DNA of 63,664 nt, filler included, from Salisapilia sapeloensis CBS 127946 (Eukaryota > Protista > Oomycota): assembly GCA_023334545.1 (NCBI GenBank). It is 12 parts of 12 records of this genome, joined end to end, with 100 filler letters (N's around TTAATTAATTAA, not from the genome) between each part and the next. Parts side by side here need not be neighbours in the genome. Positions count along the whole stretch, not along the records: positions 1 to 18,580 come from JAADVB010000320.1; 11 more parts are not named here. One strand, given 5' to 3'. This document shows positions 1,039 to 18,580 of this stretch, one piece after another. The notes below the pieces were generated by a model that worked only from the letters and a program-made list of their open reading frames with translations, was not told the DNA's origin and made no database searches. Both the position numbers and the translations under genes were made by a program. Within the stretch, counting starts at the first letter, position 1. The number at the start of each line of letters is the position of its first letter.

Positions 1039-2124
1039 ATGGGCAAAGACTACTACAAGATCCTCGGTGTCGCGAAAGACGCGGATGATGCTGCATTGAA
1101 GAAAGCGTATCGAAAATTAGCGATTAAGCATCATCCGGACAAGAACCCCGATAATCGGGAAGAAGCTCAAAAGAAGTTCCAAGAGGTCGGAGAAGCTTAT
1201 GAGGTGTTGTCGGACAAGCAGAAACGAGAGATTTACGACCAGTACGGTGAAGAAGGATTGAAAGGAATGCCAGCAGACGGAAGTCCGGATGGAGCTGCGG
1301 CAGGTGGTGCTGGAGGTATGCCTGGCGGATTCCCTGGTGGATTCCACTACTCTTCCAGTGGCGGTATGCCCGGTGGTTTCTCATTCCACTCGTCCGATCC
1401 GTCCAAGATCTTTGAACAGTTCTTTGGCACGAGCAATGCGTCGGAAGCGGAAGGCATGGACCCGTTCGCATCCATGTTCGGTGGCATGGGCGGCGGACGT
1501 CGTGGTCGCCGTGGCATGGGTGGTATGAATGGCATGGACGATATGTTCATGGGCGGTGGCATGGGTGGTGGCCGTCAGAAACCGGAGAAGCTGACCAAGT
1601 CGCTCGAGTGCACGTTAGAGCAGCTCTTCACGGGATGCACGAAGAAGATCAAGATCACACGTCGTGTCTTTGATCCGAACACTCAGCAGCTACAGGAAGA
1701 AGCCAAGGTACTTGAGATCAACGTGAAACCTGGCTGGAAGGACGGCACGAAGATTACGTGGGAAGGATACGGTGATCGATTGCCGGACCGACCGCCTCAA
1801 GACATTGTCTTCGTCGTGAAGGAGAAGCCACACGCCAAGTTTACGCGTCAAGGCGACAATTTAATCTACAAGGCTAAGATCAGTTTGAAGAATGCGCTTG
1901 TCGGACAAGGCAGTACGCTCACGATCAAGTCACTCGACGAGCGGGAGCTCCCGGTGAAGCTTAGTGGTATCGTCCAACCAGGAAGTCGTCAAGTGGTTCG
2001 TGGAGGTGGCATGCCGCTACAAAAGAATCCAAGTGCTCGTGGCGACTTGATCGTCGAGTTTAACGTCCAGTTCCCGACGTCCTTGACGGAAGCGCAGAAG
2101 AAGAGTCTCCAGGAGACATTGTAA
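1039..2124 (+). CDS. DNAJB: Hsp40/DnaJ class B co-chaperone (Sis1/DNAJB4-like)
   Basis: [12 protein letters not shown]-domain with HPD motif, G/F and G/M-rich linker, and C-terminal substrate-binding domain ([31 protein letters not shown]). No zinc finger. True start taken as ATG 1039. Confidence 0.95.
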
Positions 2125-2189: not shown

Positions 2190-3136
2190 TTACATTGTTC
2201 CGCGACGAACGTGCTGGTATTGGAGCATTTCGGGTACGAGTTTCTCGGCCGTGACACTTGATGGCCAGTTGAGCGCAGCATCGTCCTTGGTGGTCTTGGA
2301 TAAGTCCTTGGCTTTCTTCATCTGCTGGTCCTTGAGCTTCTGGATGAACGCGTGCATGCCTTGGAGAATCGCATCAGGGTCCGAGCCACAGTCCGAGCGG
2401 AGACGTTCGAGCTTGGACTGGATCTGATCGAACGTGACGAGGTTCTCCCTCGCCATCTTGCGCTCCAGTCGTTTCTTCTCTGACTGCATGCCAGCGAGCT
2501 GCTTTTGGAGCCGGTTCACGAGGAATTCTTGTTCCTGCTCCAATTCGTTCTCCAAATGCACCTTTTCATGGAGAATCTTGGCGAGCTGAGACTCCAACGC
2601 CGCTCGGACACTACTATCTTCATTCGAAAGTTCGAGGAGCAGCCTCTCCTAGAAGCATGTTAGATATAGATTTTGTATGTAAGTGGAATCAACAAACTTT
2701 TTCGGCCTTGGCTGTCTCGAGTTGCTTGTACAGTTTGTTGACAATGTACTCTTGCTCATGCTCGAGTTTATTCTCGAGCTCGACCTTTTCACTAGCAATG
2801 CGTCCATTAGTATATCCATCATGTATCATCATTCGAGAAGAAAGACTAGTCGTACGTTCGTAGTTGGTTGAGTTTCTTCTGGAGCGTATTGGTAAGTAGC
2901 TCTTCCTCGCGCTCCACTTCTTGTGCTAACTTTTCCTTTTCTTCCTTAAGAGTGTTTAAGCGTTTAATGAGGAAATTCGTAATGCGCTCTTCCTCGACTT
3001 CTGTCGACTCGCCCAGTTGGACGAGTGCTTCCTTGAGCTGCTTGACTTCAGACTCGAGTGCGTTCGTACGTTGCTTTTCCAATAGTAGCTGCTCCTTGAC
3101 GTCCATGTCCTCACATCTCTTGGGTGGCGACTGCAT
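2190..3136 (-). CDS. CCDC6: CCDC6-like coiled-coil protein, 3 exons (3136-2856, 2791-2698, 2648-2190)
   Basis: Repeated EEE.ITN.L.K.L / ELE.EQE.LVN.L.K motifs typical of CCDC6. Two GT-AG introns (64 and 49 nt) join the ORF fragments in frame. Confidence 0.8.
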
Positions 3137-3374
3137 CGTGCTCGGCTTACGGTAGAATACTGACGCGAGGATATAGTGGAAAAAGAGCCGATAATATGGA
3201 ACGAGTCGATGAAAGAGAAGAAACGTGGTACGTTTTTTAGACCACTTGGTGGCTAGGGAATGGCGTCGATTCGATCAAGTACGGTTGAAGTGACGCTTGA
3301 AGATCGCGAGGATACAGCTACCGAAATGACTCGAGGTAGAGGGATGGGAGCGAAACGGACGAATAGGAAAAGGC

Positions 3375-6300
3375 ATGGAGTCGAACAAGCGGGGGAGAGA
3401 ATTAGGATTGCCTGCTTTAAGTCAGAGTAATCAGCGCGATAGTGCGGAATCGACGGATCTACCTAGCTTTGACCATGTCGTTGTGAATGCTGGCGTGCCA
3501 TCTAGTGACTATTTTACATTCCGTCATGAGAATTGGGGAGAGATAGATGATCAAGATATTATACGTCCACCTCAACAAGTCTCTCGTCCTAAACGTCAGC
3601 GGACGTGGTATCCTCCTATTCGTGTGCCATTAGCACATCGAAAGCTAGTGCATATGGACTCGGTATTAGCGACACCGACGCGACCGAAAAGCGATTATAT
3701 TAGTCGCAAAAGCTTTCGTCGGCACACAATCGATACTGGCATCGTACCAACTGCTAGTAAAACCTCTCTTATAAGGCCAATTGTAGCAACAGCTCCAGAT
3801 GAGAACGAGTCGAGAGATCGATATAGAACAAACGTCATGGCTTTACGGCATCGTCATCCACGTACATATGATCAGCTTGTAGCTCGGTACAAGAATGTAC
3901 GTAACTTGTCCCCGGACAAACGCTTTCAAGGACGTGTTAAACAGACTTTGAGATCGAAAGAGACGTGTGAACCTTTATTCCGTGTAGAAGACGCGATACT
4001 GTTGTTTCTAGAGAAGAAGCACAAGCATCATGTATGTTACCTCCAATCCAATGACTTTCGAAAGCATATAAAGGCTAGACGAACAGAACGTCTATCATCT
4101 CCAGGAAAGAAACAGGAAGGAACGAAGTGTGATGATCGGATGATGCCGTACGATCTAGTCGAAGTTTCTGAACCTCCAGACCCAGGAAATGGGGATTATT
4201 ACATTCTGTCGGGAGCAGCATTAATGCATCATCCAAATAACGCAGTAAGAGAGATAGAAAAAGAGGAAGGAGAGGTTATACCGTTGGATGAGTGGATTTT
4301 AGAACGACAGGCGTTCACTCTCATACTTGCCGGTATTCCGCTCTTTCAAAAGTTTACTCTTCGACGATTATTTGTACAGTGGAAGGAGAATGTACAAGGC
4401 AGGCTGTATCATGAAAAGCTTGTGCATCTATCTCAAGTTCTACCATTCGCTCAAAAGCATCTCGTACAAGCACTTTTGACGTCTCTCGTTCACTTTCGAA
4501 GGATGCAAAGCGTCTACGTACTAGAGTTACCACTACGAACAGGACATGCTATATCGATGCAGGATGTCGTACAGAACTTTAAAATCTTACGCGGACGAGC
4601 AGATAGCGAGTTGTTAGATGCAAAAGAGTGTGCGTTAGTTGCGATAGAAGCAGTAGTCACGAAGCTGGAGAGTTATTTACACTCGGAGCCGATAGATGCC
4701 ATTGATAGTCTTTCTAGTCCTGTAGCTAAAGATTTGCACATCCTAGATGCCAAGTGGAAATCTCCTCCTCTATCTGCTATTCATTACATTCGAGACAGCT
4801 TACACACGAAGCAACAAGCTGCTCGACATGAATTAAAGCAAGTAGGCAATTGTCTTTGTTGGATGGCATACGTGTATGCTGGAAGCTTATATAAGATGGT
4901 ACTTGGTAACGTCCAACGCCTTGCGATGGATTTACAACGAGAGCGAAATGCTGGTTGCGTTAGTATAGCTGTACGCATGACAGACGATGGATGGAGTTTG
5001 ACACCAGCTTGTCATGAAGTCAAAGAGATGATACTCGAGGCCATCGCACAGTTCATTCGTCTAGCATCTAGCTTTCATTTCTCTCGGAATACAGTACAAT
5101 GGAGTGAAGGTCGAGGCAATGGAAAACTCGCATTCATCCTACGTCGTCATGCAGGACCTTGTGAGATTGCATTTAGCCTCGGACAAGTCCTACGAATCGA
5201 TCGTGACTTTGATATAGCGTCTAGTACTCTACTTGACTGTATTGAAACTGCTTTTGAACGTGGTCGTTCGGAAGTAGATATCCACGATACGTTCCGATCG
5301 ATATCGAAAGATGTTCATGACTCTGTCCGTCGTAGCTACAAGCGTCGATTAGCTCTCGAGCTGGCATTATTCGGAGGTAAGAACAGACCTAGTATTAACA
5401 GTAGCCAAGTCAAAAAGTACGAGAAGAGTTTATTGCAGTTAGAAGCTTCTTATCATACATGTGCCAAGCTGCAGTCAATGTGGAAAGCAGGTTTTCTAGA
5501 AGTCCAATGTCATGATCCAGTGGTTGAATTACAGAACGTTATTCATACAGAGCGACATGAACAAATATCTTCACTTGAGAAAGCGAGTGCGTTGAGTGTT
5601 CAAAAGTGTATTGAAAAGCTACAACGAGCCATCGGTATTTTAGATGAGCGTCCACAGGTGGCGGATTTATTCTGTAGGCAAGTAAAGGAGGCAAAGGTTT
5701 TGAAAGAAGATGATAAACGTATTCATAAAGAAGCCATGACACTAGAGAATGCGATCATAACATTAAAAAATTGTACAACAGCGAATATCGAGGAGAGTCA
5801 AGTACCGATGAACTTACTTCGTCGTCTGTATGCAAAGTACACGACAGCATTACGATCACAGCAAAAGTTTGAGGATAGTATGATGCCAGTGATTATTCAT
5901 CAAGTCTCAATTGCACTGCAGAAAAATGCTTCTACTTGCCATCAGCTTTATGCTTTATACGATGAACATCGTGATCTATCTACAGAGGACGAATTGGAGG
6001 AAAAGATAGGATTACTTCAAAGCTCAATTGACCAAGTAAGGGAAATAGCACTTGCGACGACTTTATACCAAGCGTATCAAGAGGTCATCCAGCATCAGCC
6101 AGTAGTCGTAGAAGCCTTGCAGGAGACAGTTGAGAGGTGGGAATACGCTGAAGAGGTGATTGAAAGCGTACAGGAATGGCGTCGTATGCTTCACACAATA
6201 CTGTTCTCCATCGTGTTTTATCATGACTGGGTCGGGCAGCTACAAGCTGTAGACGAGTTACTTCATAAGCTGGAGCGAGTACAAGAAAAAGGATCGGTAG

Positions 6301-9300
6301 AGAATAACAAACTTGCGTTTGGGCGTTGCTTACTGCAGAATGTTCAAAATAGTATGACAGCATGGCGAGGTCGTATGGAGCTTTTGCTTGCTGTAAACGA
6401 ATCGCGTCTAGACGTTCAGGAACTGAATCTGATTGCAGATATGCTTGACCTTTCCATCGTATGCAGTGAGACTACAAGAGCCGTGATGCTACCGGATGGC
6501 TCACCACTTCTTGTTCATCATCTAGAAGACAAGAGTTTCTGGCAATTTGCCCTTGAAATTCGTCAGATACTTGAGAAGAGTAAAGATGACAAAGTCATTA
6601 AGTATTGTGTGGACGAGATAAGTTTGCAATTGAAAGCTCCAGTGGCTTTCATTATCGAAAGCAGTGGCTGCTGCATGTTTAATGCCGAAGCAGCAACCCA
6701 GGCATGGAAGCACCTTCGAAAGTGTCAACAAAATATCACTTCTACGTGTTCATCGAAGCATTTGACAGAAGTAGTGGTAAAGTACTTGGATGAGGTACGC
6801 ATGTGTCAGAAACAACTTACAGAATGGATGAAGGTGGAAAGAGAATGGGAGAAGATGGCTCGAATATATTGTTCAGAAGATGTCGTTCAGTATCACGGTG
6901 GGAAACCTATCAAGTTCACAACACTCTCTAAGAATTGGCAGGAAGTCATCGGACAAGCAAATACTTCTACTAGCCTAGGACAATGCCTACTACAAGTGGT
7001 GCAGCCAAGCTTTCTTAAATATTGTCGCTCATCTTTAAATGAGTTGGCAAGTGCTTTGACTGGATATCTGGATAAATTACGACAAGAATGTTCTCGTTTT
7101 AATTTTATCAGTAACAACGACCTTATTCAGGTTCTTGGCCTTGTAAACGATCGAGAAGTATTTGTACAAGAAGGAGTACGTCGTTGCTTTCCTCAGATTA
7201 CTAAAGTCTTTCTCCAGAAAGAGGGTGGGGATTTGGATGATCTGAGGATTGTGGGAATTCAAGGACTTTTGTCTACATCGTCGTTAGAGATCACTCCAGT
7301 GTCTATTACGAGTTGCTTTGCTGGATGGATGAAAGAGCTTGATGAGCACATTCGAGATGCAATGCAAAAGCAATTTTCAAGTATGTTTGCTGCAACCATT
7401 ACTCCTCTCTACGAAGGACACTTTAGTTATGCTGAAGACAGTCTATCATCTGAAGAGGAAGTAGAATGGACGATAGCGCCATGCCAACTTTATGTCTTGG
7501 GTGTTCAAATACTACTAACGACAGAGCTGGAAGAATTTGCGAAAACATCATGTACATCGGAATGGGATAGATTCTGGCAGAGGTTTGGAAAGAAAATAGA
7601 CAACTTAAGCGAGATTCTCCGCTTATCCAGTTTGGATAAGACCACTAGATGTATCGCCCGATGCGTTCTAATTGCTCTTCTTAATCGCGAGCCAGCAATG
7701 CGGGAACTTCAGGAGCAATTGATGAAGAACGAAGGTGTATCAACGACAGCTCTATTTATCTCATCTTCGCTTATGCGCTTTCACTATTTTCATGAGAATC
7801 AGTCTTGTGCTATCTACCACGGGCTTCAGACCTACGACTATGGGTTTTCCTTCTTAGGTTCTATGCATCCGATTGCAACAGGCTCTACTTGTGACACTAG
7901 CATGGTTTCCATAAGCAACATGTTCGCAGTAGAAGTAGGTGTATTGGTATCTTCATCTGCTTTGAAGGGTAGTCGGATACGCGATAAAGAGCTAGTGTAT
8001 CACCTGGCAGCTACAGTTGGGATAGAGCCTATGCTTATTGATCTTGCTTATGATACATCATACCTCCATCGCATGGTTGATGGAGTTATCCAAACACAAT
8101 TTGTGTGGGGAATAATTGACAATCTAAAAGAAGCCTTCTATACCTCTGCAGCAGGGAAGCAACAACAATTTACAAGTGTCATGAGCATGCTTTATGATAA
8201 ATACAAAGAGCGACTTAGTAGTATGACGAGACCGTTGGGATCCTCCGATAAGCTTCACTCTTATACGAAGTTTATCGCTTTATATAACATGAAGACTGCA
8301 CAGAGCTGGAGCGATGAATGTCGTTGCCATTTAGAAGATAACTTTGCAGCGATAACTATCGAGGCGGTAGATCGAGCGCATATGCTTTGTACACTGGCTA
8401 CAGCAGAAGGATTAGTTGAGCAAGAAACAGCTATCGGACAGCTTTTAGACAGAGTTCTAGGTGATCTGGAGCAGGTTGTCGATTGCTCAATGGCTGTATC
8501 CTTGTTCGATCAATATTTCTTGGCATTCTTCATGCACAAGATTGCTCTTCAATTCGGATTATCCACAAACAAGTCTCTTGTATCATGTGTGCAGAACGTT
8601 ATTATCGACATTATATCTCCTTCGATGGATATGCATAGATTATCTTTTCTTTTCCACGCTACTCACGACAGCCTCGCTGAAAATGAAAGGGTACTTTCAC
8701 TTCCGACAGACAAGGTGCTTAGTCCGTTGCTTGAGCTGGGTCTTGATGCCGACAAAAAGGTCATAGACTTAGGTGTATGCAGACAAGACCATGATAGTGC
8801 AAATGTACAATCAAGTGTGGCTGACAGCAGAAGTGGAAGCTTACATGAGCTTTGCAATTTGGTACGAGCAAATCATTTCATTGCCACAGATACCTTTTTG
8901 CGGAGCTTGAGTCATTTAAAGACTGCTGTACAAAGCAATGATGTAGTCGTATTGGTCGGAGATGCTATGACAGGTAAATCGACAGCGATTAGTCTATTAC
9001 GTGATCTGTATACTTCAGAAGAAGCTACCTATCAAAACCCATCGATTCAGCTAATAAAAATGTATCCGGAAGCTTATTTACCGCAAGATCTATATGGTAG
9101 CTATAATGAAGACAACGATATTTGGATGGATGGACATTTTACTCGAATAATGCGTCAGGAGAAAAAGGAAGTAGACACAACACAACAAAATCTAACTTGT
9201 GCCTCGCAAAGCTTATCATCGCATTGGATTGTGCTATCTGGTGGCGATTGTGTTGCGGAAGTAATTGAGCGATTAGACAAACACATTTGTCAGCCGGTGA

Positions 9301-12300
9301 ATGCGAAGCATTGCCTCTCAATGTTACTGCCGAATAGTGACCATGTTAAAGACACAATTCATCAGTTAAAAGTGTTGTGTGAAGTAGACTCACTGGCAAA
9401 TTGGTCACCTGACGCCATTTGTCACACGAATATCGTTAGTTTTCATTCAGAAGAGTCTGTTTCATGTACTGCTTTAATAGGAAGCTGGAGATGTAGAGTC
9501 GAAGCCCAGTATAAAGATATCGATCATGCTCGGCAGTTTGTTCAGGAGACTATCGAATGTGTAGTAATGCACTTGGAGTCTCTTGTGGACTTCTACCAGC
9601 AAACCATGAAGATGAGTGAGCCTTGCCCACGCCTGTCTAATCGGCACTTGGTACATAACGTACTTGGTGTGCTGAGTACCTTGATAGCTGAGGTGGCAAG
9701 AGCATTGCTCCCAACTAGTGCAATTGACTTATGTACTGTTTCAATGGTCTTCATATTGGCTCTTACAATGTCATTGGGATCGATGGCTACTCAAACTGTC
9801 CGCGAAGCATTTCATTACAAATTGATGACAATATTTCCTATGCTTTTGGATGATCAAACTACTTTTCGACTCTTATCAAAGTCCGCTGTGAATGTGTTTG
9901 ATATCGGCTTTGACATGGTCGATGGACAGCTCGTACTTTACTCTTGGAAGGATCGTTTCCAGGACATGATATACTCATATAAATCCAATCCATCTTCAAG
10001 CCAAAATATTGCAGCACAAACCAATTCGAACGTTACCAGTCGACACGAATCGACCATTGAATCCACCCTGGAAGATTTATATCACACTCCCAATGTCTTC
10101 ATTCCAACAGGAGAGCTTTTGCAGACTGAAAGCAACTTGCGGTATTTTGCAAAATCAAATCTGCATGCCTTTATCTATGGCAAAGCTAGTACAGGTAAAA
10201 GTACGATTGTAAAGCATGCAATTCGACAGCTTCAGCGAGGGCATGAAATCGATGCACAAGTTGTACAGACTAACGCAAGTTTTGGTCACAAGTCACTTGC
10301 GACAGCACTTGATGGTCTTGGAGAGCATACAGCTAGCCGAAAGCGACACCCAGCTATGCCAGCTAAGTCGTGCCTTGTCTTGCTGGAAAATCTGAATTTA
10401 GAATCTGACGTGAGTACCTCAATACTTATTGAATCAACAAAGATACTCTGGCTTATTTTTAATTTTAATTCGATGCATGATAGAAACCCCGTGGAGAGAG
10501 AAAGACACAACCGTCATCTTCACTAGTTCAGCAGTTATGTGATACAAACGGGTTTTTCTCGACTTATACCAAAAGATTTGTAAAGCTAGCTAACTTTGCT
10601 GTTTGGATAACTCATACCACATCACCGACATTAACATCAGTGAACAACTACTCGCCTCGTCTCCTCCGTCATTTCCATTTCGTAAGAAACAAATTATTTT
10701 TTACATGCATGAAGTGTTTAATGATCACTGATATTGCTTATCCAGGTACGAATGTGTGGGGAAGGAGAAGCTATCAGCAATGTTTTACATGCCATTGTTA
10801 CAAGCCACTTGGTCGCAAAACATAGCTTGAAAAATGAAATGAAAGCACAGATAGAGCAAGTGTTCCAGTACCCTCGCCAAGTCTATGCAGCTCTGCAGCA
10901 TTATCCAGCACCGATGGGGTTCTCGACAAGCTCAAATCCTTCCTATCTGGTTCGAACGATGCAGCAGCTTGTACTTACATCTCCGAGCATATTGTTGAGT
11001 CGATTGGAGCTAGAGAAACTAACATTGTACACCACACTCCAGTCGTATGTATCATTGGTATCTTTAGAAGCTAGTCGTCAATTCTTCATTTCTGCGCTAA
11101 AGAAAGCTCACAATGCTTTGGGTTTTAAATCCAAACCGATGAAAATGGACCAGGCATCGAAAAGGTCGTCATATTTAATTCATGAAAACACCAAGACATT
11201 GCGCGAAATTGGCTATGAAAATGCTTCACATCACTTTAAGACTGGCCACGAGCATTTGTTGTGGAGTGAAAGTGGTCGAGGGATCAAAGGCGACAACGGT
11301 CCAGCTCTACATGCTTGTCCAAAATCTGTCGAGATCTTGATTTCTATGTTAAATGCATCATATACAGGATCAAGAAACTTTATACTACGTGGAGGATATG
11401 ATTGGGAACGTTTTGGAATGGCTCAAGTCTTTGCAGGTAGCCTAGGTCTCCGTTTTCAATCGGTTCGACCACAATCGAACATCCAACTTTTAATTGATCA
11501 AATTGACGCGATAAGGAGCGATAAGCAAATTAGCCCGCAACACAAGATACTATATATTGATCACGACGTGCTTTCACAAGAAGAACGCTTGGCAATCTTA
11601 AACTACTTGCAAATGGAGATGTTTCGACTGGCTTTTGAAGAGGCAATACCAAGTGAGGCATTAGGAAGCGTGTATGTCGTCCATTCCAGTGACTATGTCG
11701 ATGCCACCGCTGAAATCAAATCTTGCTGCCCGACTCTCTTCTACCAATCCAATATCATCAGCCTCAGTCGCTCCGAGTTAGAGGATAATGTCGCGATGCA
11801 TTTCGCATACAATAATTTCTTGTATTCTAACGAGAATATTCTTGAGGCAATTGAACGCCGAGGTACTTATCAAAGGTTTGGAAAGTTTCCACATCAGTTG
11901 GAGGAATGGCTAGTGCATATTCACAGTATCTGCAGTAAAAGACCATGGACGACAGAATCATATGATTCAACGAGTAGATATAGAGACTTTTATAAGCCAT
12001 CTTTTGAAGGATTCTTAGAGCGCATAAGCAAAGTATTTGCTTACCAGATGCATCAACGACAGAATCGGATACAGAAACTTGGCAAAGCTCTTTATCGTAT
12101 AGACGAGATGTCTGCTGAAATTACCACAGAGCTCGCTGAATTCCATGAAAAGGAGCAAGAGTATCAAGTTGCTGTTCAGAATGTAGTTAAGGCTGAAAGC
12201 ACTTTACACGAGCATGAGACCGCCGTATCAGAAGCGAGAGATGCATTCTTAAGAGACGATTCGATGCTTGGGCAGCTTCGGGAAAATATTAGCTATGAAA

Positions 12301-15300
12301 ATGATCAAATCAAGGAAACGATGAATCATATACTTCCAGAGTTAAACGGTGCCACGCAATCTCTAATGCGTATCAATAAGCATCACATTCGTGAAATGAA
12401 ATCTTTCGTCAAGCCTCCACAACAAGTTCGTCTCACCATGCAAGCTGTCTGTGTCCTACTAGGTGTCCAACCAACGTGGGAAGAAGGCTTGCGACTGCAA
12501 GGAGACATGCATTTCATTAATCGTTTGACTAGTTTTGATAAGGACAGTATTCATGCGTCTGTTCTTCGACGCGTAAAGGTGTATACGAGCCAGCCTGAGT
12601 TTTCAGTCGAGCGTGTTCATCAAGCATCCGTCGCTGCCACCACAATATGTGAATGGGTGCTCGCATTGGTCAAGTATACAGACATGAAGGAGCAGACTGC
12701 ACCATTGCAAAGACATATTGACATGAAGGAAGAAGAGTACCAGGAAGTTCAAAGGCAAGTTCAGTCTGAAAAAACGAGATTGGCTTCCATGGAAATTCGA
12801 CTTCAGAACGTTCGGTCTGAGTGGAAAGCTCGTGTGCATCATCGAGATGCTTGCCAGGCGAACATTGCAAGTCAGCTCGAGTGGAAAGAGGAATCGATAG
12901 AGCTTCAAGGTGTGTTAAACGAATGGAGACGAAAAATGAACAAGTTAAAACAAGACTGGGAAGGCGATATAGAGTTCTGGTTACTACATGATTGTGTCAT
13001 CGTTGCAGGGATTGCTGAATACATGAATCATGAGTCTAGCGATGCGTGGATTCAAACATGGAAGAAGCTACTTGCGCAATCACCATATAGTACAAAAGAA
13101 ACCCGTCGTAGCTTTCTACGTAAACTCAAGCTAGATTTTGGACTCGACGGTATGACTCGACTGGTAAAGAACTGGATGCTTGGCAGTAGACCGTTTCAGC
13201 AGAGTTTGCTGACAAAGAAGATTGGGTGTGGAAACTATAGCGAGCAGCTTGTGCTTAAGCTTGCGATTCTGCAGGAGGTCGCTCGATCTGTTACCGTGCA
13301 CCCAGTCGTTGTGGATCCGTTTAACCATTTCTCCGACGTGTATAAAGCTCTAAGTACTTTGGCTACGAGGCCTTTAACAGGTCAGGAAAAGAATGTAGCG
13401 TCGGAGATGGAAAGCTCTCGTTGCTCAGAAGATGAATCGCCGTATCGACTGCATTACATCAACGACTCTGATGGTATTGATTACATAAAGGGTTTGATTG
13501 ACAAATCACATCCTCAAGAGGTAAGCGAGTACTCTACCTTTACTAGGTGTGTACGACTGATTCACAGTATTATTCAACTCATCATTATCTATCGCTAGAT
13601 ACTAGCTTTTGAAGTCTCGCGTTGTACAGATTATCAAATGCTTACTTTGCTCGATACGATGGACGGTCGTAACAAACTGTGTCAGTCTACTTACTTCATT
13701 GTTCAATCGATTGACTGCGTTGCAGCATGGAAGCCCAAGGTAATGATTTAATCCTCTTGCCACTGCATATTCTGCTGAAATGATTGACGCTCTTTGAATA
13801 CAGATCCAAGCTCGCATCCGAGCCGTTAGCTTTAGTATGAATGAGCTAGAACTGCAGGCTTATATGTCAAAAGTGCTGTGTCGCCAGTACGCACGGAAGT
13901 TGTTTGAGGATATGACAAGCCTTCAGATGCAACAAAATAAAACTCAAATGAAAGACCGAGCTGCTGTGCAAGAGACAATTATCGAATTAATGAAAACACA
14001 AATGACGGATAAGCTTCAATGTAGAAAGGTAATAACCAATTACCTACATCATCATAAGGAAGCAGAAGAGAAAGACAAGTGCCTAGCTTTACAGCTTGAA
14101 GCGACATGGAAACAAATTTGGAGCTGTTTTGAACCTCTTGCTCGAGCTACCTTGGCTCTTCTTAAAGCTGAAGCGCACTTCAACTGGATTGATCCAGCCT
14201 TAAAACAAAGTCCACTGGAAACAAAGCGAAGAATGAATAAGCTCGTTCGCAAATATACTACAGATAGGTTGAAGAGTACGCAGCTGATAGACAAAGATTC
14301 TAAGGCCCAAGGCGTTGTCGATGAGGTAATAGTGCCCATGTGCAGAGAGTTTGTTACTTGTAGGCTGTGTGAACTGCCTCGAAAGATACACAAAACATAC
14401 AAGGTACTGATTGCTGTGTCCATTGGTGAAGCAAAAGATATGGTCGATCCGCCGTTAGCTCAATTCATTCGGTCATTGCTCTCTCATAAGCATACTCGGC
14501 CAAAAGCTATATCTACTAAAATACGTGAGGAATTTAAGCTGGGTGAAGAAAACTTAGCTGGTAACGACATCTATCAAATAAGTGAATTGATCGTAGAAGA
14601 GTACTTGCAATTAGCAAGCTTTGAATTGTCACTAAAACCGAGAGATCATAGCAATGTCCTAGATATGTATCAGGATAAGAAGCATGACATGAGCATTAGT
14701 ATGCGTAAGGTGTTTATGGAGCTCTACATCAAAGTCTACAGACGTTCCTTGCATCAGTCGACACGAGAAAAGTTTGGTATGGCATTAATTGAAAGTTTCA
14801 TTCAAGAGCAAGCGGATTGGGACATCTACCAGTTGAAGCAGACAGTCAATATCGATGACAGCATCACTAGTTTCCAGCCAAAGTCCTTGAAAACTTTGAA
14901 TCCGGCTGAAAAGCTCGGGGTAGAGCTAAGCTACTTTGGCGATGTCAGTGATCACATGACAAAAGAGCTAATCACGTGGTTGTATGGGGAAGAGCTAGAT
15001 TACGATGATAGGTTGCGTACCACTACAAATACTGTAACAGGTATCTACGAGCCATTAACGTCCATGGTGGAGCTTTATAATGACACAATGAACCTAAGCG
15101 AGTACCATGTAAGCCATCGTGATGCGATGGATGCAAATTCCACTAGGTCAACTGAATGGCGTACTCTGTCAGCATCTATGCTGCTATTTCATCGCATCGT
15201 TCAACTAGTGTCTCCCAATTCCATGGTTTCGCATAGCAATCTACGTCGCGCTATGGCTACGCTCGATCTTTTCATTCATCAGACAAATAACAATGCCGTG

Positions 15301-15585
15301 TCACGAGATGTCAGCATCATTAGGAATCTAGTCAGCTCTGTCTATGAAAGCTACATGCTTCCTGAATACAACACAGAGAAGCTAATTCTCATACTAGCCT
15401 GGTGCTTTACGCAGCCATCGTCGGACGTATCGACATCTATTCTCTCTACATACCAAAGCAATGGCAATCAAGACCGTCTACACCATCAAATCGCTCAACT
15501 ACGAGCAGAGCTATCTCGAAGAGATATCCAGTCTAGAGACTTGGACGAGATAGACGTAAAGTTAAGAGCACTACTTTTCATTTAA
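3375..15585 (+). CDS. Highly divergent axonemal-type dynein heavy chain, ~3,976 aa, 5 exons (3375-10409, 10484-10681, 10746-13520, 13599-13739, 13804-15585)
   Basis: Linker region (YLDKLRQECSRFNFISNNDLIQVL), AAA2 GDAMTGKS...PQDLYG...WMDG, AAA3 GKASTGKS...SPRLLRHF, stalk/MTBD (IREMKSFVKPPQQV...ASVAATTICEWVLALVKY) and AAA5 (VVVDP). Four GT-AG introns (74, 64, 78, 64 nt) join the three ORF-track ORFs in frame. Confidence 0.9.
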
Positions 15586-15637: not shown

Positions 15638-17843
15638 TTACTCAAGTCCAAATCCAGTAATTTCCATTTGTAAAACCTATTGGATCATCAGTAGTGAGTA
15701 CGCTACGAGAATAATTTATGAAAACACTTCGACTTACCAAAGTCAAGTATGTCTCGAGCTCATCCTTGTCGTCGTAGATCGGCAAGTCGACTCTGTTAAA
15801 GCACGTGTGTGCATGTGGACATAAACCAGCAGGAGGTGTCCCGCGAGGAACAATTTGTAGCGTAAAGATATGAATGTAACCACTAGCACTCATGAGAGCA
15901 CGGAAGCCTTCAACAGGCACGCGAGTGGCACCTGTCGCAAATTGCAGTAGTCGCCCAAGCTGCTCTTCCGAAAAGTTTTCCACAACTTCCCAGAACCAGT
16001 CGACGACTTTCTTTTCCTTTTCACGTTGTTCTTTATGAACTTCATGCGCATGATGAATGACGCGAGAGTTTGACTTCCAATCCATGACATCAATCGATGG
16101 TAGCCCACACATGAAAAAGTCGAGTTCTTGATAGTCAAAGATACCCAAAAGACGTTTCGGAATGACCTCGTACATGCCTGTGAGCATCGCTCCAAGCTGC
16201 TTATCGATGCCACCGAGCAACTTGTAACGTAGCATAGCAGCCAAGTACTCTTTCTTATTACCATCCGTGACTTCGATATCAGCGCCACCAGGTATTAACT
16301 CGACTTCGGAGCCATCCACAGCCGTCGTTGTGAACGTCAGGCAGAGCTGGTCGACGTTATCATTGTCACGTACCCAGACGCAGTTCCTGTAGAGCTCATC
16401 ATCGAGGAACTCGAGGTCAGAGAACGAGATTGGAACACCAAGAATGTGCTTTAAGAGCGGTAGAGCGAAGCGAACTTCAAAAACTAGGCCATCCAATATC
16501 GCTTTGCCAAACAATCTACCCGCGAATGTAAAGTACGTGAGGTAGTCTTCGACTGAGTCACTAGCAGGGTTGATCCAGTAGCTTTGGCTCTCGGCGTGTG
16601 TCGAGATGAAGAGTCCTGTATCTGCACTAAAGAGTTCTTTACAGACGATGCCGAACCATTCACGCAAGATGCCACCAGCATCTAGTCCAGGTTCACCATC
16701 GAATGTAATGTGCAAATGTTCTGTCATGCATTCTTGTGGTATGTATCCACCAAGCAACTTGACAGAGTCTTCGAGCACGTGATCACGTCGGATTTTCATC
16801 TTGGTCATGCCGTCCATGTAGTGGACAGAGAGGTCAGCAACGCGATTAATAAACCACTTTCGTTTCTCATTAAATGTCATGGCGAGCAGTCCCTCAAAGT
16901 CGATCGTAGAGTCTTGGAGGATGTGGTCACTTGTATCAAGAGGCAGCGTGAAGCTCTCCATCTTTTTCATTTGGACATCGCCGGTCGAATTGACCTCGGA
17001 GAAGAAACCTCCGATGGATTTCAAGTTCTTCCGATGGAGCTGATCTGCTAGCGACTCGTCTAGTTGATCGACGCTAAGAGACTTGAGCAATTGTGATCGT
17101 CCGTCATTTAGTTTCTTCACGAGTGGATCCATCTTCCGTCCTACGTGCTGAGATGTACGCACCCAGACGTACGTTCCATTAGCTATCGGCACACGCTGCC
17201 ACATGCGTCGCTTACTAGCACCTCGCTGACGCTGGTTGAGCTGGATCTCATTCAGCCGACGATATCGAAGAGCTCGCTGACGCATATTCGTCATGGCGTC
17301 GTCCAGTTCCGTTTGGGCGCTAACGACGGAAGAAGAGGATTTGAGTAGGGTGCTATTATGAAAGGAGCTCGTGGAACTGAACATGCTCATGGTGGCATTG
17401 TGTCGACTGATGAGCATCGAGTCTGTCAGGTCAAAGCTTCCGAGTTTCGACGCTGAGAACGTCGACGTATCTGCGGCGGCACCACAGAGAAGACATTTCG
17501 AAGCGTCTGGATGATTCAGATGGGCACATACGATGCACTGCCATTCAACCTGTCCTTCGGACAGTACGACTGAGTTTAAATCCTGACGCGTGAGCAGATC
17601 TCTCGTATCCACCGCTTCGATCGTATCACTCTGTCGTTTTTGAAAACAGAAGCATATAACGATCACGATGAAGGTACAGACAAAGGCGACTACGACAAAT
17701 AACGCGATCATACTTCCATCCATACTCTTGGAATCATCCATCCCAGCGTATATATCGTCGACATCAGAGGATACTGAATGCGGATTTACGTAATTCGCTT
17801 CAGATACGGAAGAGGAGTATGCTATCCGTAGATGGCGTACCAT
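15638..17843 (-). CDS. HECT E3 ubiquitin ligase with N-terminal transmembrane helix and RanBP2/NZF zinc finger (start uncertain: 17843, 17741 or 17711; last intron 15737-15677)
   Basis: Hydrophobic helix IALFVVVAFVCTFIVIVICFCF, WQCIVCAHLNHPDASKCLLC, and a HECT domain (FDGEPGLDAGGILREWF ... HAHTCFNRVDLP with catalytic Cys). The spliced end reads TLVLQMEITGFGLE-stop. Confidence 0.92.
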
Positions 17844-18258
17844 TTCTCTCCAGGTCAATTCTGAAATGAAGGGAGGATCTGGTCTCCAAAGTAGGAGGAA
17901 TGACGCGAGATTGATAGGTACAGATGGTACGCCACGCAAAGATCAAGTCAGATGGGCATGCCAGAACACAGACACTCATCTTCTTTCTATGTGGCTCCAA
18001 GTGTCTAGTAGCGTGTCCAGTGACTAAAACATCCTACTCTCGTCTCACGGCCACGAGTTAGACCATGTGACGGATAGGTACACAGATAAAGTCTAACGCA
18101 ACGTGGATACTGATATCCATTCAAGTAGGATACTGCATTCCTGTTGCTATGCATGAGAAGATAAGGAGAATGAAAAAAAAGTTGGTCTTGCTGTATTTCA
18201 TTTGCCTACGGTGGACTACTAGTAGCATGACACGCATGGACGTATCCTTCAGTCAGAT

Positions 18259-18580
18259 TTACATATTTGACTGGATCAATGGCTTGAGGTAGTTCTCATA
18301 GCCTTCCACCACTTGCGTCCTGTTCAGTGGTTCATCCGCAGCACGTTTCACGAGAGCATTGTAGATGTCTCCGTCGTAGTTACCAAGCGCAGAGTTCAAT
18401 TCAAAGTCATCATAGTCCCACGCATCCGTGAGCAAGACAACGTTCTTACGCACAACAGGTAAGAGCTTCATGAGCTGCGCACGTGCCATCTCGGCCTGTG
18501 CCGTCGAAACATAGTCATGAGCTCGGAACTCATCCATGCGTTGTGTCATCATCCACAGACCAAAGAGGTTGGCTAGACTC
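18259..18580 (-). CDS. ACOX: Peroxisomal acyl-CoA oxidase, C-terminal fragment (cut by contig end)
   Basis: LLPVVRKNVVLLTDAWDYDDFELNSALGNYDGDIY...EPLN matches the ACOX C-terminal signature. Ends SNM, a PTS1-like tripeptide. Confidence 0.85.

What the first reader, a model, noticed from the sequence alone, without database searches (positions are those of the whole stretch)
7830..12680. Dynein heavy chain with a dead AAA1 engine but a conserved microtubule-binding stalk
Seen: AAA1 aligns positionally with the canonical YGYEYLG...GPAGTGKTET...WACFDEFNRI but reads YGFSFLG...VSSSALKGSRIRDKE...WGIIDNLKE. It therefore has no Walker A lysine motif, and Walker B DE has become DN. AAA4 (ILRGGYDWERFG) also lacks a P-loop. 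AAA2 (GDAMTGKS, 8958) and AAA3 (GKASTGKS, 10179) keep Walker A, but the AAA3 Walker B reads LLENL. In contrast, the stalk/MTBD (~12330-12680) is the best-conserved part, and the ~3,976-codon frame is intact over 5 exons, which argues for purifying selection rather than a pseudogene. Established: AAA1 hydrolysis is essential for dynein motility. Inference: a non-motor 'pseudo-dynein' acting as a static microtubule cross-linker, brake or scaffold in the zoospore axoneme, conceptually like the divergent animal DNHD1.
Basis: partly seen in the sequence, partly recalled or inferred. Interest (0 to 1): 0.72.

Follow-up and report, generated by a model that had tools for sequence, protein, structure and literature searches.

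The report
Oomycete dynein without a working engine
This is an expressed, correctly spliced gene for a dynein-like giant protein that has lost every ATP-burning site but keeps a strongly conserved microtubule-gripping tip. It belongs to an old, oomycete-only dynein family that shares this defect, so it most likely acts as a microtubule tether and not as a motor.

Summary
The + strand gene 3375-15585 has 5 exons and encodes 3976 aa. All four GT..AG introns are removed in RNA-derived contigs from two samples.

The protein is a very divergent dynein heavy chain.
- At the position that aligns with canonical AAA1, by sequence and by predicted structure (Z 15-19 to human and yeast AAA1), there is no P-loop. 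The Walker B Glu is Asn, and the sensor-II Arg and the AAA2 arginine finger are gone.
- Only AAA2 and AAA3 keep P-loops, and neither has a catalytic Glu. AAA4 has no P-loop.
- No other P-loop exists in any frame of the piece.

It is not an orphan. HMMER finds an oomycete-only clade (Phytophthora, Nothophytophthora, Pythium, Globisporangium, Achlya). It is collinear from tail to stalk, and every member has the same two P-loops and a dead AAA1.

In that clade the MTBD is by far the best conserved part (82% identity within the clade, 53% to this protein), followed by the tail. dN/dS between two Phytophthora orthologues is 0.12 overall, 0.15 in AAA1 and 0.04 in the MTBD.

The family probably corresponds to Kollmar's oomycete-specific DHC classes 14-16, whose ATP sites were not analysed. 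Non-motile dyneins are already known in animals (DNAHX, DNHD1). An axonemal location is inferred, not shown.

The parts
3375..10409 (+). Exon 1 (2345 codons): start ATG, family-specific tail (aa 1-915), linker (DHC_N2, aa 915-1335), AAA1, AAA2 and the N-terminal part of AAA3
   Evidence: The RNA-like contigs start at about 3340 and run unbroken to 10409. There is an in-frame stop upstream of the ATG. Pfam gives DHC_N2 at 6e-27 and AAA_7 at 2e-7.
7782..8954 (+). Degenerate AAA1 module, large and small subdomains (aa 1470-1860)
   Evidence: No Pfam AAA_6 hit. The AF2 model built with the family alignment has pLDDT 71.5. It superposes on AAA1 of human, yeast and dynein-2 motors with Z 15-19 over 270-290 residues.
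7950..7991 (+). Position of the AAA1 Walker A: SSSALKGSRIRDKE instead of GPAGTGKTETTKDL
8106..8132 (+). Position of the AAA1 Walker B: WGIIDNLKE instead of WxCFDEFNR (catalytic Glu replaced by Asn)
8550..8576 (+). Position of the AAA1 sensor II: QFGLSTNKS instead of DYGMRAVKS (Arg replaced by Ser)
   Evidence: The role of this Arg comes from general AAA+/dynein knowledge and from PMC11785096.
8958..8981 (+). AAA2 Walker A GDAMTGKS, retained
9402..9431 (+). AAA2 'SPATVSRCG' (SRC-type arginine finger pointing into the AAA1 site) reads WSPDAICHTN (Arg replaced by His)
   Evidence: The assignment as arginine finger rests on my own knowledge of the AAA+ box VII/SRC motif.
10179..10202 (+). AAA3 Walker A GKASTGKS, retained
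10374..10403 (+). AAA3 Walker B LVLLENLNLE (canonical D-D/E replaced by E-N). This matches the family consensus LENLNLE.
10410..10483 (+). Intron 1 (74 nt, GT..AG)
   Evidence: Joint seen in contigs of X2, X4 and X5 and absent from the DNA run X1.
10484..10681 (+). Exon 2 (66 codons), continuation of AAA3
   Evidence: It is collinear with family members at 32-38% identity.
10682..10745 (+). Intron 2 (64 nt, GT..AG)
10746..13520 (+). Exon 3 (925 codons): rest of AAA3, AAA4 without a P-loop, stalk, MTBD and the start of the post-stalk region
   Evidence: Pfam MT at 1e-20.
12036..13055 (+). Stalk coiled coil with the MTBD. The MTBD core lies at about 12336-12725.
   Evidence: phmmer gives E 8e-30 to DNAH2. 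No insertions relative to canonical MTBDs. MTBD identity is 53% to the family, against 14-30% elsewhere.
13521..13598 (+). Intron 3 (78 nt, GT..AG)
13599..13739 (+). Exon 4 (47 codons)
   Evidence: Weak collinear matches to P0137 and P0300.
13740..13803 (+). Intron 4 (64 nt, GT..AG)
13804..15585 (+). Exon 5 (593 codons plus stop): unrecognisable region where AAA5/AAA6 should be. It ends about 600 aa short of the Phytophthora orthologues, so there is no Dynein_C.
   Evidence: No Pfam hit, no PDB hit at E<=10 and no dynein-like features in the Atlas search. It has weak collinear matches to family members. Phytophthora orthologues carry PF18199.

Best explanation
The gene encodes a 3976-aa member of an oomycete-restricted clade of dynein heavy chains. 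The clade has kept the dynein architecture: family-specific tail, linker, AAA ring, canonical-length stalk and MTBD. It has lost all catalytic ATPase chemistry.

State of the AAA sites:
- In this protein AAA1 has no P-loop, no Walker B Glu, no sensor-II Arg and no trans-acting Arg finger.
- AAA2 and AAA3 keep P-loops but lack a catalytic Glu, so at most they bind nucleotide.
- AAA4 has no P-loop.

Shown:
- the gene is transcribed and spliced;
- the clade is under purifying selection;
- constraint is concentrated on the two ends of the molecule, the MTBD above all and then the tail.

Inferred:
- The protein cannot perform an ATP-driven power stroke.
- It works as a passive, or at most nucleotide-binding-modulated, microtubule tether. 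The tail would anchor it to a fixed structure and the MTBD would hold a neighbouring microtubule.
- The most likely site is the zoospore flagellar apparatus, because the tail has the length and Pfam profile of single-headed inner-arm dyneins.

The window's copy is the most derived member. It has a very long branch, has lost even the Lys position that its relatives keep in AAA1, and lacks the C-terminal ~600 aa.
For: Gene model and expression:
- Four GT..AG introns are removed in contigs of runs X2, X4 and X5 (two samples, one study) but not in the DNA run X1.

Dynein identity:
- Pfam finds DHC_N2, AAA_7 and MT, and there are PDB dynein hits.

Dead sites:
- Alignments.
- Only two P-loops exist in six frames.
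- The AAA1 model superposes on AAA1 of solved dyneins with Z 15-19.

Family:
- HMMER hits at E 1e-74 to 1e-26 are all named oomycetes or unnamed Logan/MetaClust proteins. Canonical DHCs start at about 1e-16.
- The match is collinear at 25-28% identity over about 2400 aa including the tail.
- The tree puts the clade at 100* apart from canonical DHCs, with the query inside it at 99*.
- Linkage to DnaJ is conserved: 31 kb apart in P. oleae, and on contigs of the same length (6,421,089 bases) with nearby locus tags in P. ramorum.

Selection:
- dN/dS between P. capsici and P. citrophthora is 0.118 over 3331 codons, 0.149 in AAA1 and 0.038 in the MTBD core.
- Domain identities: MTBD 0.53 to the query and 0.82 within the family, tail 0.30 and 0.51, AAA1 0.19 and 0.37.
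Against: - No biochemical or localisation data exist for any member.
- Nothing here shows that this organism makes flagella, or that the RNA samples were zoospores.
- Most relatives keep a G-K-R remnant in AAA1, and all keep P-loops in AAA2 and AAA3. Nucleotide-dependent behaviour is therefore not excluded.
- The query's terminal branch is very long (2.72 substitutions per site, against 0.03-1.4 for relatives). Its ring and C-terminus are barely recognisable, so constraint on this particular copy is weaker than on the family.
- dN/dS was measured on Phytophthora orthologues, not on this gene.
- The test of flagellate against aflagellate species was inconclusive.
Confidence: 0.62

Rival explanations
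1. It is a nucleotide-gated switch and not a purely static tether. ATP or ADP binding without hydrolysis at the retained AAA2 and AAA3 P-loops, and at the GK remnant of AAA1 in relatives, would set the stalk register and so the microtubule affinity.
For: The AAA2 and AAA3 Walker A motifs are conserved in every family member. The stalk has canonical length with no indels. DNAHX keeps ATP bound in a non-hydrolysing AAA1 (PMC11785096).
Against: In the query the AAA2 Walker B Asp is Ser and the AAA1 P-loop is gone altogether. There is no evidence of nucleotide exchange or of a partner that would drive it.
Confidence: 0.2
2. The family works in the cytoplasm, for example on flagellar rootlets, the spindle or cortical microtubules, and is not part of the axoneme.
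For: The tail has no Pfam domain. Its only similarity to an axonemal tail is weak (E 0.019). No flagellar proteome or expression data could be linked to the P. infestans orthologue.
Against: Kollmar 2016 reports that the tails of the new classes align with axonemal tails and infers axonemal localisation. No family member was listed from the Peronospora, Hyaloperonospora, Bremia, Plasmopara or Albugo proteomes, although at least the Peronospora, Bremia, Plasmopara and Albugo proteomes are in the database. This is weak evidence, because the zoosporic Plasmopara and Albugo were not listed either.
Confidence: 0.25
3. In this lineage the gene is decaying. It would be a relic under relaxed selection that is still transcribed.
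For: The terminal branch is 2.72. About 600 C-terminal residues are missing and exon 5 is unrecognisable. AAA1 is more degenerate than in relatives.
Against: A 3976-codon frame across four correctly spliced introns is intact. Divergence is strongly uneven, with the MTBD at 53% identity against 14-25% for most of the rest. That is not what neutral decay gives. RNA-like contigs from two samples cover the laid stretch without differences.
Confidence: 0.08
4. It is still a motor, using non-canonical catalysis or a catalytic residue supplied in trans.
For: The linker, ring order, stalk and MTBD are all retained.
Against: No site combines a P-loop with a catalytic Glu. The AAA1 Walker A, Walker B, sensor II and Arg finger are all lost. 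AAA1 hydrolysis is required for dynein motility by established knowledge; PMC2533788 names AAA1 as the main hydrolytic site.
Confidence: 0.05

Closest known systems
Oomycete-specific dynein heavy chain classes 14-16 (Kollmar 2016, PMC5100056)
   Same: They are restricted to Oomycota and are bona fide DHC homologues with divergent motor domains. Classes 15 and 16 have class-specific extensions in AAA domains and a unique region where AAA5 normally lies. That matches the roughly 55-60 aa insertions between AAA1, AAA2 and AAA3 and the unrecognisable post-stalk region here. The paper reports loss of the 'C sequence' for class 14 in Albuginales, and the window's protein also lacks it.
   Different: The paper states that ATP hydrolysis and microtubule-binding sites were not analysed. 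The loss of all catalytic sites and the extreme MTBD conservation are therefore not described there. I could not tell which of the three classes this clade is, because no supplementary sequences are held. The MTBD shows no extended loops, which argues against class 14.
DNAHX (sea urchin non-motile dynein heavy chain, preprint PMC11785096)
   Same: It is a full-length DHC with poorly conserved AAA1 motifs and is proposed to be non-motile.
   Different: DNAHX is animal-only and derived from the outer-arm alpha chain. It still binds ATP at AAA1 and keeps a Walker B, and an insertion has disrupted its MTBD. Here AAA1 has no P-loop at all and the MTBD is the best conserved part, so the opposite end of the molecule is preserved.
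DNHD1 (animal 'orphan' dynein heavy chain)
   Same: It is a divergent DHC that lacks the AAA1 Walker B catalytic residues and is needed for cilia and flagella (as summarised in PMC11785096).
   Different: No sequence kinship was shown. The query's nearest relatives are exclusively oomycete proteins. Kollmar's class-12 dyneins, a Holozoa-wide class named in his text, are described as having an unusual stalk without a typical MTBD. That is the opposite of the situation here.
Single-headed inner-arm dyneins (DNAH6, DNAH7, DNAH12 type)
   Same: The overall length is about 4000 aa, with a tail of about 900 aa before the linker and no DHC_N1 domain. DNAH6 and DNAH12 are the best PDB matches for the linker and AAA1 region, and DNAH2 for the stalk.
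   Different: Those are active motors with canonical GPAGTGKT and DEFNR motifs. Identity to them is only about 20%.

Membership tests
Dynein heavy chain superfamily | Linker domain (DHC_N2) N-terminal to the AAA ring | tested here: met
   Pfam PF08393 at E 5.9e-27, aa 915-1335. PDB dynein linkers align.
Dynein heavy chain superfamily | Antiparallel coiled-coil stalk with a microtubule-binding domain between AAA4 and AAA5 | tested here: met
   Pfam PF12777 at 1e-20. phmmer gives E 8e-30 to DNAH2 and also hits isolated MTBD structures.
Dynein heavy chain superfamily | Catalytic AAA1 (GPAGTGKT Walker A, DE Walker B), the main ATPase | tested here: not met
   The fold is retained but the motifs are lost. 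No PF12774 hit.
Dynein heavy chain superfamily | Six concatenated AAA+ modules | tested here: inconclusive
   AAA1 to AAA4 are placed by alignment. The 800 aa after the stalk have no detectable similarity to AAA5, AAA6 or Dynein_C.
Oomycete-specific divergent DHC clade (Kollmar classes 14-16) | Forms a clade with oomycete-only DHCs apart from the nine canonical classes | tested here: met
   HMMER ranking and source names. Tree support is 100* for the clade and 99* for the query inside it. The match is collinear including the tail.
Oomycete-specific divergent DHC clade (Kollmar classes 14-16) | Organism is an oomycete | tested here: met
   The neighbouring DnaJ has best named hits that are all oomycetes at 58-63% identity. 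DnaJ-DUF2046 synteny is shared with Aphanomyces; Phytophthora and Peronospora carry an unnamed gene of similar size and strand at that place.
Oomycete-specific divergent DHC clade (Kollmar classes 14-16) | Assignment to one particular class (14: extended MTBD loops; 15/16: AAA extensions and a unique region in place of AAA5) | tested here: inconclusive
   No MTBD loop insertions. AAA insertions and an unrecognisable AAA5 region point to class 15 or 16. Reference sequences of the classes were not available.
DNAHX / DNHD1 non-motile animal dyneins | Sequence or phylogenetic membership in those animal subfamilies | not tested
   No DNAHX or DNHD1 sequence was in hand. All close relatives found are from oomycetes. 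The published range of DNAHX excludes protists.

The most novel reading that the evidence does not exclude
Oomycetes carry an ancient clade of dynein heavy chains that is conserved across their two main lineages. In it every ATPase site is catalytically dead, while the microtubule-binding domain and the tail are under the strongest purifying selection. This would be an independently evolved protist 'pseudo-dynein' that works as a passive or nucleotide-binding-gated microtubule tether in the zoospore flagellar apparatus. It would mirror animal DNAHX and DNHD1, but with the opposite end of the molecule preserved.
Probability: 0.45. Interest if true: 0.65.

Novelty: new variant of a known kind. 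Interest (0 to 1): 0.55.

Why it matters
Dynein heavy chains are treated as motors by default. Non-motile ones were recognised only recently, in animals, and were reported as absent from protists.

An oomycete-wide clade with no catalytic site and a highly constrained MTBD and tail would show that 'dynein as a static strut' evolved more than once. It would also give a natural experiment on what the ring, linker and stalk do without ATP turnover.

Oomycete zoospores are the dispersal stage of major crop pathogens, so a lineage-specific flagellar component also matters for understanding their motility. The finding fills a gap that the published classification left open, since it did not analyse the ATP sites.

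Tried and rejected
1. The word-index search with exon 1 found only canonical DHCs at about 21% identity. This was a sensitivity limit and not absence of relatives, because the exhaustive HMMER search found the family.
2. The exact look-up of the DnaJ protein found nothing in the collection.
3. The AF2 model of AAA1 built with only canonical DHCs as alignment had pLDDT 38.9 and was discarded. It worked once family members were added.
4. I tested whether the dynein sits next to DnaJ in other species. In P. ramorum and Aphanomyces it is not within 10 kb. In P. oleae it lies 31 kb away.
5. I walked along the syntenic block in the aflagellate Peronospora effusa to see whether the dynein is missing.
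   - The block DnaJ, 276-aa gene, TMF, Trm112, GN3L, RPAP2, ECH, PAP is kept.
   - The fetched DNA ends 727 nt past PAP. That is just short of where the dynein would be, since the distance is 808 nt in P. oleae.
   - Stepping further needed spliced proteins that have no reference, so I stopped. The result is inconclusive.
6. Exon 5 gave no Pfam, PDB or Atlas match. The tail gave no Pfam match.
7. No supplementary files are held for Kollmar 2016, and no paper cites the P. infestans accession.
9. A hidden canonical AAA1 exon is rejected. There is no other P-loop in any frame and no alternative joint in the RNA contigs.
10. The joined spliced protein was never sent to any search tool. Exons were searched one by one by reference, and scripts treated the exons separately.

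Full report
**Gene model and expression**

The + strand carries one long gene. Mechanical ORFs at 3375-10526, 10734-13598 and 13837-15585 are its pieces.
- Contigs of three runs (X2, X4, X5; two samples, one study) lie on 7850-13849 with no differences. They skip 10410-10483, 10682-10745, 13521-13598 and 13740-13803.
- A DNA run (X1, possibly the source of the assembly) keeps these stretches.
- All four skipped stretches begin with GT and end with AG. Although the records only guess that the runs are RNA, the contigs must therefore come from spliced RNA.
- By arithmetic on contig positions the transcripts begin near 3340. The ATG at 3375 has an in-frame stop upstream.
- I did not send a joined protein to any search tool. 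Exons were searched by reference, one by one.

**It is a dynein heavy chain, but a very divergent one**
- Pfam finds DHC_N2 (6e-27), AAA_7 (AAA3, 2e-7), a weak AAA lid and the MT stalk (1e-20).
- Pfam does not find AAA_6 (AAA1), AAA_8, AAA_9 or Dynein_C.
- PDB dyneins match the linker and AAA1 region (DNAH6, 8e-18) and the stalk with MTBD (DNAH2, 8e-30).
- The 916-aa tail has no Pfam domain. Its only match is a weak one (E 0.019) to a Chlamydomonas dynein heavy chain of 4185 residues.
- The last 593 aa match nothing in Pfam, the PDB or the Atlas.

**The ATP sites**

MAFFT alignments with 8-10 canonical DHCs give the following.

| Site | Canonical | Here |
|---|---|---|
| AAA1 Walker A | GPAGTGKT | SSSALKGS…RD |
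| AAA1 Walker B | CFDEFNR | IIDNLKE (Asp kept, catalytic Glu now Asn) |
| AAA1 sensor II | DYGMRAVKS | QFGLSTNKS (Arg now Ser) |
| AAA2 SRC motif | SPATVSRCG | SPDAICHTN (Arg now His) |
| AAA2 Walker A / B | P-loop / FDGP | GDAMTGKS / LSGG |
| AAA3 Walker A / B | P-loop / FVDDLNMP | GKASTGKS / LLENLNLE |
| AAA4 | P-loop | no P-loop under either plausible alignment |

- The Arg of the AAA2 SRC motif is, to my knowledge of AAA+ box VII/SRC motifs, the finger that reaches into the AAA1 site.
- A six-frame scan of the whole piece finds only the two P-loops at 8958 and 10179. No canonical AAA1 exon is hidden, and the RNA contigs show no alternative joint across AAA1.
- An AlphaFold model of aa 1470-1860, built with a family alignment, has pLDDT 71.5. 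Foldseek matches it only to dynein motors.
- The model superposes with Z 15-19 over about 270-290 residues on human dynein-1 residues 1845-2169, yeast 1735-2025 and dynein-2 1633-1931. All of these are AAA1.
- The AAA1 fold is therefore kept and correctly placed, while its chemistry is gone. No site in the protein combines a P-loop with a catalytic glutamate.

**Organism and neighbours**
- The upstream gene (1039-2124, +) is a DnaJ-B protein. Its best named relatives are all oomycetes at 58-63% identity: Globisporangium, Phytophthora, Plasmopara, Albugo, Aphanomyces and Saprolegnia.
- A DUF2046 gene lies on the minus strand at 2190-3136. Aphanomyces has a DUF2046 gene at the same place next to DnaJ. 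Phytophthora and Peronospora have an unnamed minus-strand gene of similar size there.
- The organism is an oomycete with no close relative in the protein collection.

**The family**
- An exhaustive HMMER search with aa 1150-2345 of exon 1 gave a top group at E 1e-74 to 1e-26. Canonical dyneins start at about 1e-16.
- The named members of that group are P. capsici, P. infestans (annotated 'dynein heavy chain'), Pythium oligandrum, Globisporangium splendens and G. ultimum. Achlya hypogyna follows at 1e-20.
- A search seeded with the P. infestans protein adds full-length orthologues of 4500-5044 aa in at least 12 Phytophthora species and in Nothophytophthora.
- The window's exons 1 to 5 are collinear with these proteins at 25-28% identity over about 2400 aa of exon 1, including the tail.
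- A maximum-likelihood tree separates the clade from canonical DHCs (100*). It places the query inside the clade, sister to the Phytophthora/Pythium group with Achlya outside (99*). Its terminal branch is very long at 2.72, so the exact position is uncertain.
- Linkage supports orthology. In P. oleae the dynein and the DnaJ orthologue lie 31 kb apart on one contig. In P. ramorum they are listed on contigs of the same length (6,421,089 bases) with locus tags 12 apart.

**The dead engine is a family trait**
- Every member has exactly the two P-loops, in AAA2 and AAA3. Two stray far-downstream matches in P. capsici and Achlya look like chance.
- At AAA1, all members lack the Walker B acidic pair (for example CCTGLEI and LFSGVEV) and the sensor-II Arg.
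- The AAA1 Walker A is degenerate in all members. Most keep a G-K-R remnant, which the window's protein has also lost.
- The family AAA3 Walker B is [DE]-N, and the window's LENLNLE matches that consensus.
- The Phytophthora orthologues still score on Pfam AAA_6 and some on Dynein_C. The window's protein does not, and it ends about 600 aa earlier.

**Selection**
- Codon alignment of the P. capsici and P. citrophthora orthologues covers 3331 codons with dS 0.47.

| Region | dN/dS |
|---|---|
| overall | 0.118 |
| tail | 0.083 |
| AAA1 | 0.149 |
| stalk with MTBD | 0.060 |
| MTBD core | 0.038 |

- Identity by domain is shown below.

| Domain | Query to family | Within family |
|---|---|---|
| MTBD | 0.53 | 0.82 |
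| tail | 0.30 | 0.51 |
| linker | 0.24 | 0.49 |
| AAA1 | 0.19 | 0.37 |
| post-stalk | 0.14 | 0.27 |

- The two ends of the molecule are the constrained parts and the ring drifts.
- The MTBD has no insertion relative to canonical MTBDs, and the stalk has canonical length.
- In the window's copy the uneven conservation, the intact frame and the splicing argue against a pseudogene.

**Interpretation**
- The best reading is a non-motor dynein-like tether. The tail fixes it to some structure and the MTBD holds a microtubule. The ring serves as a rigid, or at most nucleotide-binding, spacer.
- An axonemal site is plausible but not shown. Kollmar infers axonemal tails for the new classes, and the tail here resembles single-headed inner-arm dyneins in length and in lacking DHC_N1.
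- The test of flagellate against aflagellate species stayed inconclusive.

**Relation to what is known**
- Kollmar (2016, PMC5100056) defined oomycete-specific DHC classes 14-16. He noted AAA extensions and a unique region in place of AAA5 for classes 15 and 16.
- He stated explicitly that ATP hydrolysis and microtubule-binding sites were not analysed. This clade is almost certainly one of those classes. I could not tell which.
- Non-motile DHCs are known from animals:
  - DNAHX has AAA1 locked with ATP and a disrupted MTBD, and is reported as absent from protists.
  - DNHD1 lacks the Walker B catalytic residues.
- The oomycete clade is an independent case with a different combination: AAA1 emptied and the MTBD preserved.
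- I found no paper that describes this.

**Verdict**
- The 'pseudo-dynein' interpretation is supported at the sequence, structure-prediction and selection level. Location and mechanism remain unproven.
- The gene is a derived member of a known lineage-specific dynein class, and its loss of all catalytic sites appears not to have been reported.

Noticed in passing
window 1039-2124 (+): Intronless DnaJ subfamily B gene (J domain plus DnaJ_C). Its best named relatives are all oomycetes at 58-63% identity, and I used it to place the organism.
   Followed up: yes
window 2190-3136 (-): Two minus-strand ORFs (2190-2597 and 2846-3136). The first hits DUF2046, and together they probably form one two-exon gene. 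Aphanomyces has a DUF2046 gene at the same place next to DnaJ. This region is therefore not a set of upstream dynein exons.
   Followed up: partly
window 15642-17939 (-): HECT ubiquitin ligase with a RanBP2-type zinc finger, convergent with the dynein. Only 56 nt separate the two stop codons. By their lengths, the RNA-like contigs of X2 and X5 appear to run from the dynein on into this gene, so the 3' ends probably overlap.
   Followed up: partly
window 18259-18552 (-): ORF matching the C-terminal part of acyl-CoA oxidase (Pfam ACOX, 9e-31). It is probably the last exon of a gene that is cut off by the end of the piece.
   Followed up: no
window 13804-15585 versus P0297/P0300: The window's dynein ends about 600 aa earlier than the Phytophthora orthologues, which carry a Dynein_C hit. 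The C-terminal domain seems to have been lost in this lineage.
   Followed up: partly
tree: The window's dynein has a terminal branch of 2.72 substitutions per site, against 0.03-1.4 for its relatives. The neighbouring DnaJ is not unusually divergent. The dynein has therefore evolved exceptionally fast in this lineage.
   Followed up: partly
L007 (P. oleae), L008, L009/L010 (Peronospora effusa): A block running DnaJ, a 276-aa minus-strand gene, then, in Peronospora, TMF, Trm112, GN3L, RPAP2, ECH and PAP is shared among Peronosporales; the P. oleae loci show the part from Trm112 to PAP. In Phytophthora the dynein sits just beyond PAP, next to a WD40 gene. In the window it sits directly after the DUF2046 gene, so the region has been rearranged.
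   Followed up: partly
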